A stretch of 63,811 nucleotides of DNA, filler included, from Perkinsus chesapeaki ATCC PRA-425 (lineage: Eukaryota; Protista; Perkinsozoa), in the NCBI GenBank assembly GCA_013115145.1. It is 9 parts of 9 records of this genome, joined end to end, with 100 filler letters (N's around TTAATTAATTAA, not from the genome) between each part and the next. Parts side by side here need not be neighbours in the genome. Positions count along the whole stretch, not along the records: positions 10,691 to 16,599 come from JAAPAO010001119.1; 8 more parts are not named here. One strand, written 5' to 3'. The notes under the pieces were generated by a model, which was not told the origin of the DNA, made no database searches, and saw only the letters and a program-made list of their open reading frames with translations. Made by a program: the position numbers and the translations under genes. Position 1 is the stretch's first letter. Each line of letters begins with the position of its first letter. Below are positions 10,691 to 16,699 of this stretch, piece by piece.

Positions 10691-10769
10691 GGTTACAGTG
10701 GACAATATCCCAGCAATATTCGCTGTAATTTGGAGTTTCGCTGTTTTGGCAGATTTTGAGTCTGAAAAA

Positions 10770-11085
10770 AAAAAATGCAAATGCGCAAAGGGGGTGAAGG
10801 AAAAAAAAGCACCCCCGAAGGTAAAATTCCCTTTAAGTCCCTTGCGCATTTGCAAAATTTTCAAAAATTGTTGCAAATGCGCTTTTGTTATTTGGCCGGT
10901 TCATTGGTGTCAGAAGTTGCCTGGGGTGGTTACACGATGCACGGAATTGGTTGGAAGTTGTGTGATTGAGAATTGGTCGTGTCACACAATTTTGCGCATT
11001 TGCAAAAATTCGCAAATTGGACAAAAAAGGGTCGCGCACAGTCAAATTGCGCAAATTTCACTTTGAAGTGAGTGCGCATTTGTGG
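10770..11085. repeat. Cluster of TGCGCA(TTTGCAAAA) motifs in both orientations; probable DNA-transposon/MITE subterminal repeats
   Basis: GCAAATGCGCAAA 10777, TTGCGCATTTGCAAAA 10842 and 10993, GCAAATGCGC 10873, TTGCGCAAAT 11047, GTGCGCATTTG 11072. Confidence 0.6.
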
Positions 11086-11151
11086 GGCAGAAATGTGGTG
11101 ACAGCATCGTTTTTTATAATAAATATTCTATATTTAGTATCTTTATTATAA

Positions 11152-12078
11152 TTACATTATTACAACATTCGCAACAATATAAAGATAAGGCAAGTCCAGG
11201 GGATTACGTACAGCAACATCCTCATAAGTTAATCGAAATCTATAAAAAGCTTTACCAATATCCAACGAAACCATAGCATTTTCAGCCTTGTTGTGAGTAG
11301 ATGTGCAAGTAGAGGATTGATCTGGCTGAGGTGAAATATCTGTAACTGGCGTTGCCTCAAAAGCCAGTCTCAATGCCGTTAACAAGTCTCGATGAGCTGT
11401 TCCACTGTAGCTTGCCTCATGAACACCAGTGTCATGATAGGCGTCATTTATAGGAACCGCTTGTACCACTGGTCTGACCTTAAAGCTAGTCGTTTTTGAA
11501 ATAGAGCCATCAGATGGAGTAGTATCACAGTTCTGCTTAACGGGAAAGCAAACCACCAAAGGGGCCGAGCTATCATTAGCTATCACCGAAGCATCTACAG
11601 TTTGCCAATGGTCCAGATGAACAAACTGTGCCAATGCTTCCTCATATTCAAGCTTCTCGGCTGGAGATAACTTATCAAATAGCTTAGATCCAAAATCATG
11701 TACATCTCGCCGCCACGGCTTAGATTCTATACCACCAGGATTTGATGAAGTAACTGCAACTTCTAACACATATTTTTGGTCAATGTGATCTTTGGATTCT
11801 TCAGCAGTTAGCAAACGGGCTCTAAGCGAGAATCCACGAGCAGACTCCAGAGGTACCCAATCAAACGGAAGAACTTGTTGTAGTGCTTCATCAATCTTAG
11901 ACCACGATAAGGAGTTGGTAATCGTAGATGTCGGACTTGAAGTAGCAAACTCCTTCGACGTGGCATGATTCAACAACATGTCCGCGTCGCCGGCAATCTC
12001 GCCTGAGTCTACAACACCACACGATACAACCTTCTGTCGCCCGTTAAAAACGAGCGTAAATGTTGCCTTCTTGCGCAA
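11152..12078 (-). mobile_element. BEL/Pao-like LTR retrotransposon pol: aspartic protease and N-terminal part of RT, truncated
   Basis: VVDSG protease motif; EYEEALAQFVHLDHW, CFPV...KTTSFKVRPVVQA...PINDAYHDTG and SLDIGKAFY resemble BEL/Pao RT N-terminal motifs (TTKxRxVFDAS, SLNDxLxxG, ADIxKAF). No YxDD motif before the stop. Confidence 0.65.
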
Positions 12079-13269
12079 TGACAGCAGAAGAGGGCTCGGA
12101 TTTCACCGATTCGGTCTTGTTGTCATCGCTCTTACTATTAACCTTCTCTTTAGTGTTATCCTCGGGCTTACAGGGGGCCTCTCCGTTAATCGCTTTTACG
12201 TTATCACTCGAAGATGAAACACCAATAACATGCTGGAATCGGCATTTATCCCCATACTTACAATTGCCATTTTTAAAGCCCCTGCAAACAGGAGTCTGAT
12301 TCTTCTCTTCTTTACCAAGCTTAGAGATACCCAATAAAGTATCTAGACTTGTAGGCTTATGCCTGTCAGCTAACTTAGTAAGAGTGTCTTCAAAATCAAT
12401 GAGGGAAGTAGAAGATTTAAGTTGAGTTACCAGATGATGCTTGTCAGAGGCTGCTTGAACATAGGGAAATGTATCCAGAGCTCCAATTAAGCGGTCCCGT
12501 CTATATTTCCAAGCAGTACTAGTAAAACAAATACCATCAATACGAGAACATAGGGCCTTTTCTTGGCTTGAAAACTCACTCCAAGTCAAGCCTTTGGTGG
12601 TTAGCAGACACCACTCCTTCAATACTTGAGAGGAATCAGAAGGAATAAATTCCTCCGAAATCTTATGACATATAGCAGCATAAACTTTATTACATATCGT
12701 TAACCAAGACATTACTGCAGTAGACATAGCTTGTTCACCATTTTCGTCATCACGATCAGGAATAGTTATATCTTTCCAAGCTTTGATAGTCGAAAGGTTA
12801 GCAAGACACTCTTCCTGACATAACCTACCAAGCCTAGCCGGAGCAAGATATGAAATGATTGCAATACCAAGTGGGCTAGCAACCCGAACGTTTCCAATTA
12901 CTCCTTGAATACGTAACCAAGCCGCATGACTCCAATCGTTCTCTAATAGCGGCTTTAAATCCCAAGATGAGACAAAAGCGCTAATAGCATAAACTTGTGA
13001 GCCACCCGGTTTAAGAAAACAAAAACCTTCAGCTTCATGATATAGAGCAAATCCTTCAAACCCCAAAGCTCGCATGACAATCCTGCAGGGGTCATCCAGC
13101 TTCCTCAGAGCGCTCTCGGTTAGATAGTCGTCAGATGATACTGACTTTCCGGGAGCTAGTCCATGGATAGCTTCACTCAGAAAACCAAAGCGCTTCTGGC
13201 AGAAGCCTTCTGCTGGAAGTTCTCGGATGATGCACCATTGTTAGATTGCGTGTCGTTCTTCGGGGTCAT
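12044..13269 (-). mobile_element. gag-like ORF1 with CCCH zinc finger; frameshifted near its 5' end
   Basis: CRGFKNGNCKYGDKCRFQH finger, overlapping pol by 35 nt. The ATG at 13269 (MTPKNDTQ...) is out of frame with the main ORF, which is open from ~13240. Confidence 0.65.
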
Positions 13270-13298
13270 AGATAGTTACAACACAATAAAATTAAAAC

Positions 13299-13320
13299 CT
13301 TGAGCCAAGATGGCTACGGA
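13299..13320 (-). other. Perkinsus spliced-leader sequence followed by GT, 29 nt upstream of the gag ATG
   Basis: Minus strand reads TCCGTAGCCATCTTGGCTCAAG|GTTTTAATTTTATTGTGTTGTAACTATCT-ATG. Confidence 0.9.
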
Positions 13321-13864
13321 AAACGGAAACACACAAACTCATTGGTCTAATGATTCATCACATTTATCTAGGTTAGAACAATTAATAAATAAGAACTTGT
13401 ATGTAGCACTTCACTAGCTTCAAGATATTCTAGCGCTACAGAAAATTAAGCCAGTGAGAATAGGGACATCACGACACAATTTGTGTCACACAAAATAGGA
13501 CAGTTCTAGAGGCCTCGTGACACCAACCATATGTTGAAAGGTATGCCCCAAGTATTCATATAAGGTGAGATCACAATTCTTGTTGACCGGGTATATTGTA
13601 TTCAGATGCTTCTTATGCATACCTGAAGTCGAGTTACTCAAACAACGCGATTCATAGCACGGCCGCAGAGGGAACAGATGACATCGCGAATGATACTTAC
13701 GAAGTTCGTAAGTATTGAATATGTAATTCGTAATACGAACTTATTTTAACAAGAAAAACTTTTACATCGTTTCTTAGGACATAACCACTGCTTGTGTTCT
13801 TGAAAATGTGTTGTCAAAAATGGCATTTATTCCTAGTAAGGCAATTTCAATGGAAGACGAATAA

Positions 13865-13915
13865 GAAAAAATTGAAGAGTATGATAAAACTTTTATCATA
13901 CTCTTCAATTTTTTC
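13865..13915. repeat. Perfect 51-bp palindrome (25-bp arms, 1-nt centre)
   Basis: GAAAAAATTGAAGAGTATGATAAAA-C-TTTTATCATACTCTTCAATTTTTTC. Confidence 0.95.
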
Positions 13916-15187
13916 ATAAAAGGTGATGTGGGTTAATTGTATCGACTTGACAATTCATGTTTAGGTTTTGAACCCATGGAGTTATGCAAGATGCGAGGAT
14001 AGAAGATAAAGAAATGCATCACTCAGAAGTGGATAATATCGGATAATCCGGCAAATACTTGCCGGTTAGTTATACGACATCTTCATGAAAAACAAAAATC
14101 GGGTTATAATACTAGTGGACATAGCAATAATTACACGGTAATGTATTCGCGGTTTTTCTATCAGATACTGAAAATACATGACAAACCTTCTAGGAACACA
14201 GGAAGAAACTTACTGAGTGTCAATATAGGTTCTATTATTGGCATCTTTGTTAAACAATGACTTAGACGGATAACAACAAACATAATCTGATGGATCCACC
14301 CTGAGTAAACGGTAAAAGTAACAAATCCTTCTGTGCATTAGTTTGCGGCGGACGTGGGCTGAACCATCAAGGAGCGTATCTGAACAAATTTACAACACCC
14401 AACGCAAAACCAAAGCAATACACAACAAGTTGAACAACACAACAATGTTGTGACAACAAGTTAAATACGCTGGAGCTTTTTCCTTACAGCGTCAAGTGTC
14501 CTCCGAGGAGGACACTCAACGCCGTGAGAAAGTGCCTCCAACTTTATAAAGTCGTCGTAGAGTTTAGGGGACCGGCCGGTAGCTTTAAAACGCCTAATTT
14601 GCATTTGCTCCCAGCCGGTCCACCTAACCCTGTTCCACTCGACGGAAGACTGAAAAAAATAGACGCAATATATGCAAGATTTTTAACTTACCCTCCTATG
14701 ATCTGAGGTCTGCACCGACTTTTCCTCGATGTTTACTTTTTCTGAAACCACAAATTTTCTCTATATTCTTATGTTCTCACTTTCTTTCTTTTCCCTCTTC
14801 TTTTTTTCTTGCTCCAGCACCGGAATGGCCGGGTGCAAAACTTCTTCACTTGTCGTTGAAAACATGTTATATATAACTGCAAAAATAAGAGGCTGCTGAG
14901 ACAGTAAAGGCTACAGCGACTGCTGCTAAATGAGATGCTTAAGACCACAGAGACTGCTGCTTCAGATACAGTGAGTTATCTTTTGTTTATGAGGTACTTC
15001 GTCACACTACGCTATTCACAACCATCCTGGTATCCTCTATAACATGCCAATTCCTCAGACTTTGAGAGCCTCCTCACTTTCTGAGGAGGTAGTAAACTGT
15101 TCATTGAGGGTGACGCTCAAGACCACAGAGACTTTAGGAGGTTCTCCGTCACACTACGCTATTCACGACTATTCTAGTATCCTCTAA

Positions 15188-15307
15188 TAGCAATCTCTTA
15201 ACTAGCAGTCTTTTAGATAGCAATCTCTTAACTAGCAGTCTCTCAAATAGCAGTCTCTTAAATAGCAGTCTCTTAAACTCCAGTCTCTTGAATAGCAACC
15301 CTTTTAG
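15188..15307. repeat. 15-nt tandem array (TAGCAGTCTCTTAAA consensus) x8
   Basis: Units start at 15188, 15203, 15218, 15233, 15248, 15263, 15278 and 15293. Inverted GAGACTGCT copies lie at ~14890-14960, and a diverged direct repeat spans ~14941-15030/15120-15180. Confidence 0.85.
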
Positions 15308-16699
15308 GAGATATTTGAATGTTTCCCATCTCAGTCGGAGAAATCAACATTCCGTAGCTTCTGAAAATACAATTTCATGTTCCTTAAGCTTACGTGGTTA
15401 ACGGCAAAAACACAAAAAAGAGCAAACGAGAAGGAAAAAAGGACGTAGGGGTCCAAACAATACGTGTAAGTTGGACAAGAGATTTATTATGCATTAAAAT
15501 ATGTGTGGTTTCAGGAATCGCTTAAATATGATTCAGGTGTAATCATTCCCTTGAATGATTAAATTCAGGTGGCCTGTTTGGGAACGTAAGAAAATCATTG
15601 AATTTTCTCGTTCCGGGCAGACCCCTGACGGTTATAATGACTTCATCCGCGCCAGGCCTCCACACAAAGGCCAGAGGAGACTCTTGGCTCGGCTCGTCTG
15701 CCCAGCACGAAGAGTTCGCTCGCTCGGCTCGGCTCGTCGTTTTTTGCCGAGCCGAGACGAGTCTCGATTTTTTCTCGGCGGATTTTCCACATTTTTTCTC
15801 ATTTCTCGTACGTGCGTGGCATTTTCGCTGGTTTTGTTAGTCAATTTTGCACGACGGTGTTGAGAATCTGTTCATCGGGCCAGCCCAGTAACTGGGCCCC
15901 AGTTACCACTTCGGCGGCCACGCCTGTATCTCATGAGTCATGACCCAAGCGCCTTCGAGTGCAAACACTGTTTGCCGAACTACGCCGCCAATACGTCCAA
16001 CCCCGCCAGTAGCTCGTCTAAAGACGACGTTAATGTCGGTGACAACTCCCCTATGTCTTTTGACGACCCCGAAGAAGTGTTCCATCCCCTGATCGCCCCG
16101 GTGAATCACTCCGCTTGCTCTATGAAGACTCCCCAATGCATAACCATTCCCGAGAAACGGAGAAAAAGCCTGGTCTCGACTGGAGAATGTACTAGTCCCA
16201 ACTTGCGACTCGCAAGATTCGTAAGCTATACGCTTCGTGCTTCGATGCATCTAGACGTGAACAAAATGGTGCCCAGATGGGACAAGCCCTTGAACTTTTA
16301 TCCTATGCACTGGCTGGTTGCATTCATGCAAATACGTTGCATTTATGATCATTACCTATCAATTTCATGCTATCAGGGACATATAGTACATATTATATAC
16401 TATATATTAGACCACCAACACTGTACATATTAAAGTGATAACTTGCCGCGGTATTGCTGCCTACACGTAATTCAACAGTTGAATTTCAGCTCCCATATCA
16501 CTCCGCTGACCCGGGGTCCCTGTGGTAACTTTTCTGACACCTCTAGCTGTATATTTCACAGACCTAAAGGATCGATAGGCCATGCTTTCGCAGTTTGTGN
16601 NNNNNNNNNNNNNNNNNNNNNNNNNNNNNNNNNNNNNNNNNNNTTAATTAATTAANNNNNNNNNNNNNNNNNNNNNNNNNNNNNNNNNNNNNNNNNNNN

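What the first reader, a model, noticed from the sequence alone, without database searches (positions are those of the whole stretch)
13269..13540. Retrotransposon carrying a host spliced leader in its own leader region
Seen: an exact SL 21-mer (13319-13299) followed by GT sits 29 nt upstream of the gag ATG of a BEL/Pao-like element. About 210 nt further upstream is a candidate LTR end plus PBS-like start (...TTTCAACA-TA-TGG at 13532-13527), which would place the SL inside the element. Known: Perkinsus and dinoflagellate mRNAs are SL trans-spliced, SL relics arise by mRNA retroposition, and non-LTR elements (CRE/SLACS, NeSL) target SL genes. Inference: the element may encode its own SL (translation mimicry, or a re-usable trans-splice acceptor via the terminal AG), may use SL|GT as a splice donor for a subgenomic pol mRNA, or may be inserted at an SL RNA gene. 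I do not know of a cis-encoded SL in an LTR element.
Basis: partly seen in the sequence, partly recalled or inferred. Interest (0 to 1): 0.85.

Follow-up and report, generated by a model that had tools for sequence, protein, structure and literature searches.

The report
Spliced-leader relic on a retrotransposon fossil
A perfect copy of the Perkinsus mRNA spliced leader lies in the genome just ahead of a broken, single-copy LTR-retrotransposon fragment, most likely because a trans-spliced transcript of the element was copied back into DNA, which is a known kind of relic on an unusual cargo.

Summary
An exact 21-nt Perkinsus spliced leader (SL; 13319-13299, minus strand) is preceded by T, followed by GT, and lies 29 nt before an ATG. 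The piece is a Perkinsus chesapeaki contig.

The downstream ORFs belong to a divergent LTR-retrotransposon family. Relatives in P. olseni have LTRs, a primer-binding site (PBS), a polypurine tract, protease, RT, RNase H and integrase. This copy is defective, with a frameshift, the protease catalytic half missing and RT cut off. No second copy at 80% identity or more was found in contigs of two independent samples.

The family's PBS motif, TGGTGCAYCRTCC, lies at 13237-13225. That is downstream of both the SL and the ATG, not at 13527. So the SL sits where R/U5 of a 5' LTR should be. The two relatives whose LTRs can be read have no SL.

The SL lacks SL-RNA-gene features. It does match the intron-less, T-starting SL-like sequences already reported in P. 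marinus.

Best reading (about 0.45): it is the fossil of an SL-trans-spliced element mRNA that was reverse-transcribed and integrated. An SL captured inside a true LTR (about 0.2) is not excluded. There is no evidence of expression.

The parts
13299..13320 (-). Genomic spliced leader: T followed by the exact 21-mer CCGTAGCCATCTTGGCTCAAG.
   Evidence: one match, 0 expected. The T start matches the class of intron-less SL-like sequences in P. marinus (PMC3101222).
13238..13298 (-). A 61-nt segment between the SL and the PBS motif. By position it corresponds to R/U5 of the element. It contains the candidate gag ATG (13269-13267).
   Evidence: Sequence. The end ...CTAACAA|TGG aligns with the L002 LTR end ...CAACACCA|TGG (5 of 500 shuffles score as high). 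The 84-nt stretch 13320-13237, which spans this segment and the SL, has no significant RNA structure (z = -1.16).
13225..13237 (-). PBS-like motif TGGTGCATCATCC. The family consensus is TGGTGCACCGTCC, and this copy differs by two transitions.
   Evidence: The motif TGGTGCAYCRTCC occurs exactly once in each of L001, L002 (right after the 5' LTR) and L004 (contig positions 4-16, right before the gag homology). (0 expected by chance).
12044..13269 (-). Gag-like ORF1 with one CCCH zinc finger (about 12227-12292). It is frameshifted somewhere between 13240 and 13181. The ATG frame stops at 13178. The long frame is open from 13240 to 12047.
   Evidence: Pfam zf-CCCH_4, E = 1e-6. tblastn to the L004 gag region gives 29% identity, E = 7e-34. 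The KRFGFLSEA motif matches KRFAFLKDT just after the PBS in L004.
11152..12078 (-). ORF2: the C-terminal remnant of the protease plus the N-terminal part of RT. The catalytic D(T/S)G half of the protease is missing. RT ends soon after the LDIGKAFYRF motif.
   Evidence: Exhaustive HMMER search: 9 relatives, all from Perkinsus assemblies, at 27-41% identity. Alignment A1 shows the missing protease half and the cut after DLPYLYI.
10691..11153 (.). Very high-copy repeat that abuts and truncates the RT. The contig ends inside it.
   Evidence: Summed contig depth is about 4e5, against about 1e2 for the unique part. Repeat contigs leave our sequence at 11153. Palindromic TTTGCGCATTTGCAAA motifs.
13321..14454 (-). 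Unique sequence upstream of the SL. It cannot be decided here whether it is host flank or U3.
Evidence: Single-contig depth with no second copy. Similarity to the L004 LTR is only marginal (15-mer at 13797-13783, 19 of 500 shuffles; 19-mer at 13500-13481, 16 of 500).
14455..14866 (-). Upstream intron-containing gene on the same strand. The NCBI model P0001 fuses it to ORF1 and ORF2.
   Evidence: No Pfam family.

Best explanation
The SL is a relic. It marks the 5' end of a DNA copy made from an SL-trans-spliced transcript of an LTR retrotransposon.

Inferred sequence of events:
1. The element's RNA was trans-spliced at an acceptor inside its 5' LTR (R/U5), 29 nt before the gag start codon and 61 nt before the PBS.
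2. That mRNA was SL, rest of U5, PBS, then gag-pol. It was reverse-transcribed and integrated without a U3, so it could not transpose as an LTR element.
3. The copy now lies as a single, defective fragment. It has a frameshift, its protease catalytic half is lost, and its RT is cut by a high-copy repeat.

Shown here: the exact SL, its position upstream of the family PBS, the LTR-type nature of the family, the defects, the single-copy status, and the absence of the SL from relatives' LTRs.

Inferred only: the trans-splicing event, the retroposition route, and that the DNA upstream of the SL is flank rather than U3.
For: - Exact SL, not chance.
- It lacks what defines Perkinsus SL RNA genes. It does have what defines the more than 100 intron-less SL-like genomic sequences of P. 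marinus: 'most started with T', variable downstream sequence, not expressed (PMC3101222).
- An environmental parallel: L007 has a T-start SL 62 nt before an actin-like ORF.
- The family PBS motif lies 61 nt downstream of the SL and just before the conserved gag N-terminus, as in L004. The SL is therefore joined to U5-like sequence exactly as a trans-spliced exon would be, with a short 29-nt 5' UTR.
- The intact relative L002 has a 3'-splice-site-like CTCTCCTGCCTTAG 25 nt before its gag ATG.
- L002 (LTRs 99% identical) and L004 (3' LTR of 148 nt) carry no SL.
- The locus is single copy, as expected for a dead-on-arrival retrocopy.
- At least one RNA contig of the species has A, not T, before CCGTAG (loose end at 13319).
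Against: - The 3' end, where a poly(A) tail and target-site duplication would sit, is lost at the repeat junction. The hallmark of retroposition therefore cannot be checked.
- No parent element at 80% identity or more exists in the contigs. Yet the two long ORFs have no internal stops, which suggests little decay.
- It cannot be shown that 13321 and upstream is not U3. There are two marginal similarities to the L004 LTR (p about 0.03-0.04).
- No RNA evidence shows that Perkinsus LTR-element transcripts are trans-spliced.
- The SL RNA intron of P. chesapeaki is not available for comparison. It is reported to differ from that of P. marinus.
Confidence: 0.45

Rival explanations
1. The SL lies inside a true 5' LTR, between U3 and the rest of R/U5. 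It was captured once when a trans-spliced, PBS-containing RNA went through the element's own reverse transcription, or when RT switched template onto the free SL exon. The element RNA would then carry a cis-encoded SL, which is the reader's 'own SL' idea with corrected anatomy.
For: - The SL sits 83 nt (13320-13238) before the PBS, a plausible R+U5 length.
- The family motif TATTG(C)TGTTA, found in the L002 and L004 LTRs, recurs 11 nt after the SL.
- The upstream DNA has marginal similarity to the 5' part of the L004 LTR at 13797-13783 and to its 3' end at 13500-13481.
- The ORFs are little decayed.
Against: - The relatives' LTRs (148 and 219 nt) have no SL.
- The implied LTR would be 235-590 nt, with no recognisable TG start.
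- No second LTR, solo LTR or sibling copy exists. The X3 contig runs unbranched for 4583 nt, so no other identical stretch of 31 nt or more occurs in that genome.
- A T is an unusual transcription start.
- An SL-complement flap should block canonical first-strand transfer (established retroviral mechanism; inference).
Confidence: 0.2
2. DNA-level juxtaposition. A 5'-truncated element lies next to, or was inserted into, an SL RNA gene, pseudogene or SL-like array, analogous to SL-gene-targeting elements.
For: - Perkinsus genomes hold many SL genes and SL-like arrays (PMC3101222).
- The SL is followed by GT, as in a donor site.
- One RNA-run contig has an internal SL preceded by 14 nt that match ours at 10 positions (record 24).
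- The P. chesapeaki intron sequence is unknown.
Against: - The SL starts with T, not A. There is no Gguag. TTTT runs begin 2 nt after the donor instead of a terminator at about 80 nt. The fold is not significant.
- There is no similarity to the SL RNA-like genes L008 and L009 beyond the exon plus GT or GTA.
- It would need a deletion end-point that falls exactly at the SL 3' end and, by coincidence, 29 nt before the gag ATG.
- The proteins are LTR-type, not the non-LTR RT/endonuclease of CRE/SLACS/NeSL.
- Only one SL is present, with no array.
Confidence: 0.1
3. A domesticated gag-like gene. ORF1 (a CCCH protein) is a host gene derived from the element. The retained SL, with its TTTCCGTTTTCCGTAG tract, serves as a reusable trans-splice acceptor.
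For: - Long open frames of 398 and 308 codons, although the locus is single copy and no parent exists.
- The SL is perfectly preserved.
- A pyrimidine tract followed by YAG lies at the SL 5' part. Reuse of relic SLs as acceptors is described for dinoflagellates (cited in PMC3942190).
Against: - No RNA covers the ORFs in the two RNA runs.
- There is a frameshift right after the only upstream ATG.
- No orthologue was found in other Perkinsus proteomes.
- ORF2 is a catalytically useless remnant, yet it is equally open.
Confidence: 0.08

Closest known systems
Intron-less SL-like genomic sequences of Perkinsus marinus (Zhang et al. 2011, PMC3101222), and the relic-SL retrogenes of dinoflagellates (Slamovits & Keeling 2008, as cited in PMC3101222, PMC3942190 and PMC6050394)
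   Same: A full SL exon in genomic DNA without an SL RNA intron. It starts with T, has an unrelated downstream sequence, lies directly 5' of a coding region and shows no expression as an SL RNA.
   Different: The cargo is a retrotransposon transcript that still contains its PBS, not a host mRNA. There is a single SL rather than a tandem array. The 3' poly(A) end cannot be seen.
Perkinsus olseni LTR retrotransposons L002 (JABANP010000058.1) and L004 (JABANP010000258.1)
   Same: The same protein family (ORF1 29%, ORF2 30-36% identity). The same PBS motif, TGGTGCAYCRTCC. In L004, gag homology also begins right after the PBS. L004 has a CCCH-type Gag finger like ours, while L002 has a CCHC knuckle.
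   Different: They have LTRs (219 and 148 nt), a polypurine tract, protease, RNase H and integrase, and no SL anywhere. Our copy has an SL, no demonstrable LTR, and lacks the protease catalytic half, most of RT, RNase H and integrase.
Bona fide SL RNA genes of Perkinsus, and the SL RNA-like gene L009 from a metagenome
   Same: An identical 21-nt exon followed by GT.
   Different: Real genes start with A. They have Gguag (P. marinus) or GTACAAG (L009) after the exon, a T-run terminator after about 60-83 nt, a two-hairpin fold, and small-RNA gene neighbours such as U2/U4 or tRNAs. None of this is present here.
SL-gene-specific non-LTR retrotransposons (CRE1/SLACS/CZAR of trypanosomatids, NeSL-1 of nematodes); from general knowledge
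   Same: A retroelement physically joined to SL sequence.
   Different: Those are non-LTR elements with a restriction-like endonuclease. They insert at a fixed position inside SL exons of functional gene arrays. Here the proteins are LTR-type, the exon is complete and the SL is not in an SL RNA gene.
Yeast Ty1 (general knowledge): gag starts in U5 and the PBS lies inside the gag reading frame
   Same: In ours and in L004 the reading frame runs through the PBS, and the candidate ATG lies upstream of it.
   Different: Ty1 is a copia-type element, and no SL is involved.

Membership tests
Perkinsus SL RNA gene | Exon identical to the mRNA leader and beginning with A | tested here: not met
   The 21-mer is exact, but the first base is T. 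P. marinus genes and mRNAs have A (PMC9399869). One RNA contig of this species has A.
Perkinsus SL RNA gene | Conserved intron start (G|guag) and a conserved first 82-83 nt | tested here: inconclusive
   Ours is G|GTTTTAATTTT, unlike P. marinus. However, the P. chesapeaki intron is reported to differ and was not available.
Perkinsus SL RNA gene | T-tract terminator at about 80-83 nt and a two-hairpin fold | tested here: not met
   TTTT runs lie at +2 and +8 after the donor, and none lies at about +60. The fold is -14.7 kcal/mol with z = -1.16.
SL relic / SL-tagged retrocopy | SL exon in genomic DNA directly 5' of a coding sequence, without an SL intron | tested here: met
   29 nt lie between the SL and the ATG.
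SL relic / SL-tagged retrocopy | Poly(A) remnant and target-site duplication bounding the unit | not testable with these tools
   The 3' end is cut at 11153 by a high-copy repeat, and the contig ends there.
SL relic / SL-tagged retrocopy | An identifiable parent gene or element elsewhere in the genome | tested here: not met
   No contig at 80% identity or more lies on 11282-12857 in X1 or X3. The nearest proteins are 38-41% identical.
LTR retrotransposon (gag-PR-RT-RH-IN order) | Gag with a zinc finger, then protease, RT, RNase H and integrase | tested here: inconclusive
   This copy has a gag-like ORF with a CCCH finger, only the protease C-terminal remnant and the RT N-terminus, and no RNase H or integrase. 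Relatives have protease DSG/DTG, RNase H, and integrase H2C2 plus rve.
LTR retrotransposon (gag-PR-RT-RH-IN order) | Flanking LTRs, a PBS after the 5' LTR and a polypurine tract before the 3' LTR | tested here: inconclusive
   The PBS motif is present. No LTR pair can be shown here. L002 has 219-nt LTRs at 99% identity, a PBS, a polypurine tract and a 4-bp ACCT duplication.
BEL/Pao superfamily | Matches to Peptidase_A17 / DUF1759 / DUF1758, or RT phylogeny | tested here: not met
   No such Pfam hit at E <= 0.1-1 for this copy or its relatives. There is only a feature-based lead at 0.90. No phylogeny was made.
SL-gene-targeting non-LTR elements (CRE/SLACS/NeSL) | Non-LTR RT plus endonuclease, and insertion at a fixed site within the SL exon of functional SL genes | tested here: not met
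   The proteins are LTR-type. The exon is complete and not part of an SL RNA gene.

The most novel reading that the evidence does not exclude
An LTR retrotransposon lineage of Perkinsus has incorporated the host spliced leader into the R region of its LTR. Its genomic RNA would then carry a DNA-encoded SL upstream of the PBS. That could mimic trans-spliced host mRNAs, or offer a reusable acceptor, without losing R-U5-PBS.
Probability: 0.18. Interest if true: 0.75.

Novelty: new member of a known kind. Interest (0 to 1): 0.4.

Why it matters
If the best reading holds, this fossil is indirect evidence for two things. Perkinsus LTR-retrotransposon transcripts are SL trans-spliced inside the LTR, upstream of the PBS and about 29 nt before gag. 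Such mRNAs can also be copied back into the genome.

This bears on how retroelements cope in organisms where mRNAs need a spliced leader. A trans-spliced RNA can be translated but has lost part of R, so mRNA and genomic RNA roles may be split.

It also adds a retroelement to the cargo of SL-tagged retroposition. It flags an NCBI gene model (763 aa) that hides the SL in a predicted intron.

If the minority reading is right (an SL built into an LTR), it would be a new way for a mobile element to imitate host mRNAs.

Tried and rejected
- Word-indexed protein search with ORF1 found no hit. The profile search with alignment A1 found only 4 proteins, none with a 5' region.
- The viral-contig scans for the SL and for relatives were blank.
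- The metagenome scan gave 3 SL loci, none of them a retroelement.
- Ten contig look-ups were made. Only L002 and L004 carry a PBS or LTR. L004 starts 3 nt before its PBS, so its 5' LTR is off the contig.
- LTR homology between our upstream region and the L002 and L004 LTRs is marginal or absent. The alignment that places the L004 TTAAG opposite the SL 3' end is not significant (364 of 1000 shuffles), so I do not use it.
- PBS-to-tRNA matching could not be done. There are no tRNA genes in the Perkinsus loci, and the four tRNAs of L009 do not match.
- In the RNA runs X6 and X7, only SL-bearing k-mers and contigs of other mRNAs lie on 13284-13333. Nothing lies on the ORFs. This is not proof of silence, because the runs are small.
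The only 'intron' here is a predicted one that skips the SL.
- Rfam found nothing at the SL.
- For one alignment inside a script I placed the L004 3' LTR in front of its contig start.

Full report
**What is there**

The piece (10691-16599) is the whole of NCBI contig JAAPAO010001119.1 of assembly GCA_013115145.1. Another protein of that assembly is labelled Perkinsus chesapeaki.

On the minus strand the exact 21-mer CCGTAGCCATCTTGGCTCAAG lies at 13319-13299. It is preceded by T and followed by GTTTTAATTTTATTG. An ATG follows at 13269, 29 nt after the leader. One match is found and none is expected, even with three mismatches. This is the 22-nt Perkinsus leader (ACCGTAGCCATCTTGGCTCAAG; PMC9399869) apart from the first base.

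Contigs built with 31-mers from two independent samples cross the leader without a difference. The junctions are therefore not an assembly artefact of a repeated 22-mer.

**The retroelement**

- The ATG-13269 frame stops after 30 codons.
- A second frame is open from 13240 to 12047. It carries one CCCH zinc finger.
- A third frame, ORF2 (12078-11155), follows.
- ORF1 found nothing in the word-indexed search.
- An exhaustive HMMER search with ORF2 found only nine proteins. The best is the NCBI model of this very locus (P0001). The eight others are 27-41% identical, and each of the seven whose contigs were fetched comes from a Perkinsus assembly.

Two P. olseni loci show what the family is.

- L002 is an intact LTR retrotransposon. 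It has 219-nt LTRs that are 99% identical, and a polypurine tract GGCTGGGGGGCG before the 3' LTR. TGGTGCACCGTCCGGAC follows the 5' LTR directly, and a 4-bp ACCT duplication flanks the element. Its gag has a CCHC knuckle, and it encodes RNase H and an H2C2 + rve integrase.
- L004 has the polypurine tract CCTGGGGGGCG followed by a 148-nt 3' LTR ending ...ACACAATGA. Its contig begins TGA + TGGTGCACCGTCC, directly followed by KRFAFLKD. That is the homologue of our KRFGFLSEA.

The family is thus LTR-type with PR-RT-RH-IN order. 'BEL/Pao' is only a lead. No BEL/Pao Pfam family matches, and a feature-based search ranks DUF1759/Peptidase_A17 clusters first at 0.90.

**State of this copy**

Alignment with relatives shows three defects.

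- The N-terminal, catalytic half of the protease is missing. Relatives have DSG or DTG there. ORF2 begins at the last protease strands.
- ORF1 is frameshifted between 13240 and 13181.
- RT ends at ...DLPYLYI, where relatives continue.

The RT break coincides with the start of a very high-copy repeat (10691-11153). Its summed depth is about 4e5, against about 1e2 for the unique part.

Across 11282-12857 the only contig laid at 80% identity or more is the locus itself. This holds in both DNA samples. In X3 one unbranched 4583-nt contig spans 11124-15706. The element fragment, the leader and the upstream DNA are therefore single copy as far as contigs can show.

**Where the leader lies in the element**

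The motif TGGTGCAYCRTCC occurs exactly once in each of L002, L004 and our locus. In ours it lies at 13237-13225, with none expected by chance. It sits directly upstream of the conserved gag N-terminus, as in L004.

The L002 LTR end plus PBS aligns to 13258-13216, and 5 of 500 shuffles score as high.

The leader therefore lies 61 nt upstream of the PBS, where R/U5 of a 5' LTR should be, and the candidate gag ATG lies between them. A reading frame that runs through the PBS is unusual but known from yeast Ty1 (general knowledge).

None of the eleven other loci held contains the leader, even with four mismatches, apart from the three fetched by the leader itself. The L002 LTRs and the L004 3' LTR are among those without it.

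**Is it an SL RNA gene?**

P. marinus SL RNA genes begin with A and have G|guag at the donor. They are conserved over 82-83 nt and end in a T-tract (PMC3101222).

Here the first base is T. The donor context is G|GTTTT, and T-runs start two bases after the donor. The 84 nt up to the PBS fold no better than shuffles (z = -1.16).

Two metagenomic SL RNA-like genes with the identical exon (L008 and L009, the latter among tRNA genes) share nothing with our locus beyond the exon plus GT or GTA.

One caveat: the P. chesapeaki intron is said to differ from P. marinus and I could not obtain it.

**What it resembles**

Zhang et al. described more than 100 genomic SL-like sequences in P. marinus with no recognisable intron. 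[quoted passage not shown] The authors linked them to reverse-transcribed SL-bearing mRNAs.

Our leader has these properties.

A metagenomic contig (L007) shows the same thing before an actin-like ORF. It has T + SL, 62 nt, then MAGNGVPAIACDNGSG....

**Most likely mechanism**

The inferred mechanism is as follows. An element transcript was trans-spliced at an acceptor in R/U5, 29 nt before gag. That SL-mRNA was then reverse-transcribed and integrated without a U3.

This explains several things:
- the exact exon/UTR-type junction and the short 5' UTR;
- the T start, which is shared with the other relics (its cause is unknown);
- the absence of the leader from relatives' LTRs;
- the lack of any sibling copy.

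The intact relative L002 has a pyrimidine tract plus TTAG 25 nt before its gag ATG. That is compatible with trans-splicing just upstream of gag in this family, but it is sequence inspection only.

Weak points:
- The 3' end, with any poly(A) tail and duplication, is lost.
- No parent copy exists, although the long ORFs look little decayed.
- I cannot prove that the upstream DNA is not U3.

**Rivals**

1. The leader is embedded in a genuine LTR (about 0.2). This is possible if a PBS-containing trans-spliced RNA once completed reverse transcription. Two marginal similarities of the upstream DNA to the L004 LTR (p about 0.03-0.04) and the short distance to the PBS fit. The absence of any second LTR, solo LTR or sibling copy, and of the leader in relatives, argues against.
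2. Juxtaposition with an SL gene or array at the DNA level (about 0.1). This needs a coincidental breakpoint exactly at the exon end and 29 nt before gag.
3. A domesticated gag-like gene that reuses the relic as an acceptor (under 0.1). No RNA supports this.

The only 'intron' is in the NCBI model P0001. That model joins an upstream intron-containing gene (14866-14455) to ORF1 and ORF2 and skips the leader.

**Expression**

The two small RNA runs of the species give contigs only on 13284-13333. These are leader-bearing pieces of other transcripts, with unrelated continuations. Nothing lies on the ORFs. That is absence of evidence only.

**Verdict**

The interpretation 'element carrying its own SL between PBS and gag' is not supported as stated.

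The feature is best filed with the known SL relics of Perkinsus and dinoflagellates. The twist is that the retroposed RNA was a retrotransposon transcript that kept its PBS.

Interest is moderate (0.4). The more novel reading, an SL captured in an LTR, keeps a probability of about 0.18.

Noticed in passing
16513-16599 (minus strand): A fragment of 28S rRNA (Rfam LSU_rRNA_eukarya, E = 1.6e-14). Its identity stops after ...GTTACCACAGGGA, inside the peptidyl-transferase-centre region. The contig ends in it, and depth there is about 1e5.
   Followed up: partly
10691-11153: A very high-copy repeat. Its summed contig depth is about 4e5, which is higher than the rDNA fragment. It is rich in TTTGCGCATTTGCAAA palindromes. 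It truncates the RT, and its nature is unknown.
   Followed up: partly
13862-13918: A near-perfect hairpin with 28-nt arms (96% complementary) and a 1-nt loop, about 540 nt upstream of the SL. It gives only weak sub-threshold miRNA-family matches.
   Followed up: no
15167-15312: A tandem array of a 15-nt unit (about 7 or more copies, CTTAACTAGCAGTCT-like), plus an 87%-identical 54-nt direct repeat at 14986 and 15133.
   Followed up: no
11152-14866 (NCBI model P0001): The deposited 763-aa gene model fuses an upstream intron-containing gene with the retroelement ORF1 and ORF2. It does so through a predicted intron of about 1.3 kb that contains the SL and the PBS motif. It is probably an annotation artefact.
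   Followed up: partly
13321-13339; L007:825-837: A GT-rich run lies directly 5' of the T-start SL, both here (GTTTGTGTGTTTCCGTTTT) and in a metagenomic SL relic before an actin-like ORF (GCTTGTGTGTGTGAT). blastn gives 85% over 40 nt. This may be chance, or a target or acceptor preference.
   Followed up: no
13025-14891 versus its flanks: In sample X1 this 1.87-kb contig has depth 271.6, against 123.6 and 100.2 on either side. Sample X3 has one unbranched contig at 76.5. Region 16027-16318 has several diverged variant contigs. This suggests haplotype-specific structure in a polyploid genome, but it is unexplained.
   Followed up: no
L009:1361-1423: A metagenomic contig with an A-start SL exon, a GTACAAG intron start and a T5 run at +38. 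It lies between tRNA-Pro and tRNA-Asn genes and looks like a bona fide perkinsid SL RNA gene in a small-RNA gene cluster.
   Followed up: partly
L002:9564-15652: An apparently intact, recently active LTR retrotransposon of P. olseni. Its LTRs are 99% identical and it has a 4-bp ACCT duplication. A 3'-splice-site-like CTCTCCTGCCTTAG lies 25 nt before the gag ATG.
   Followed up: partly
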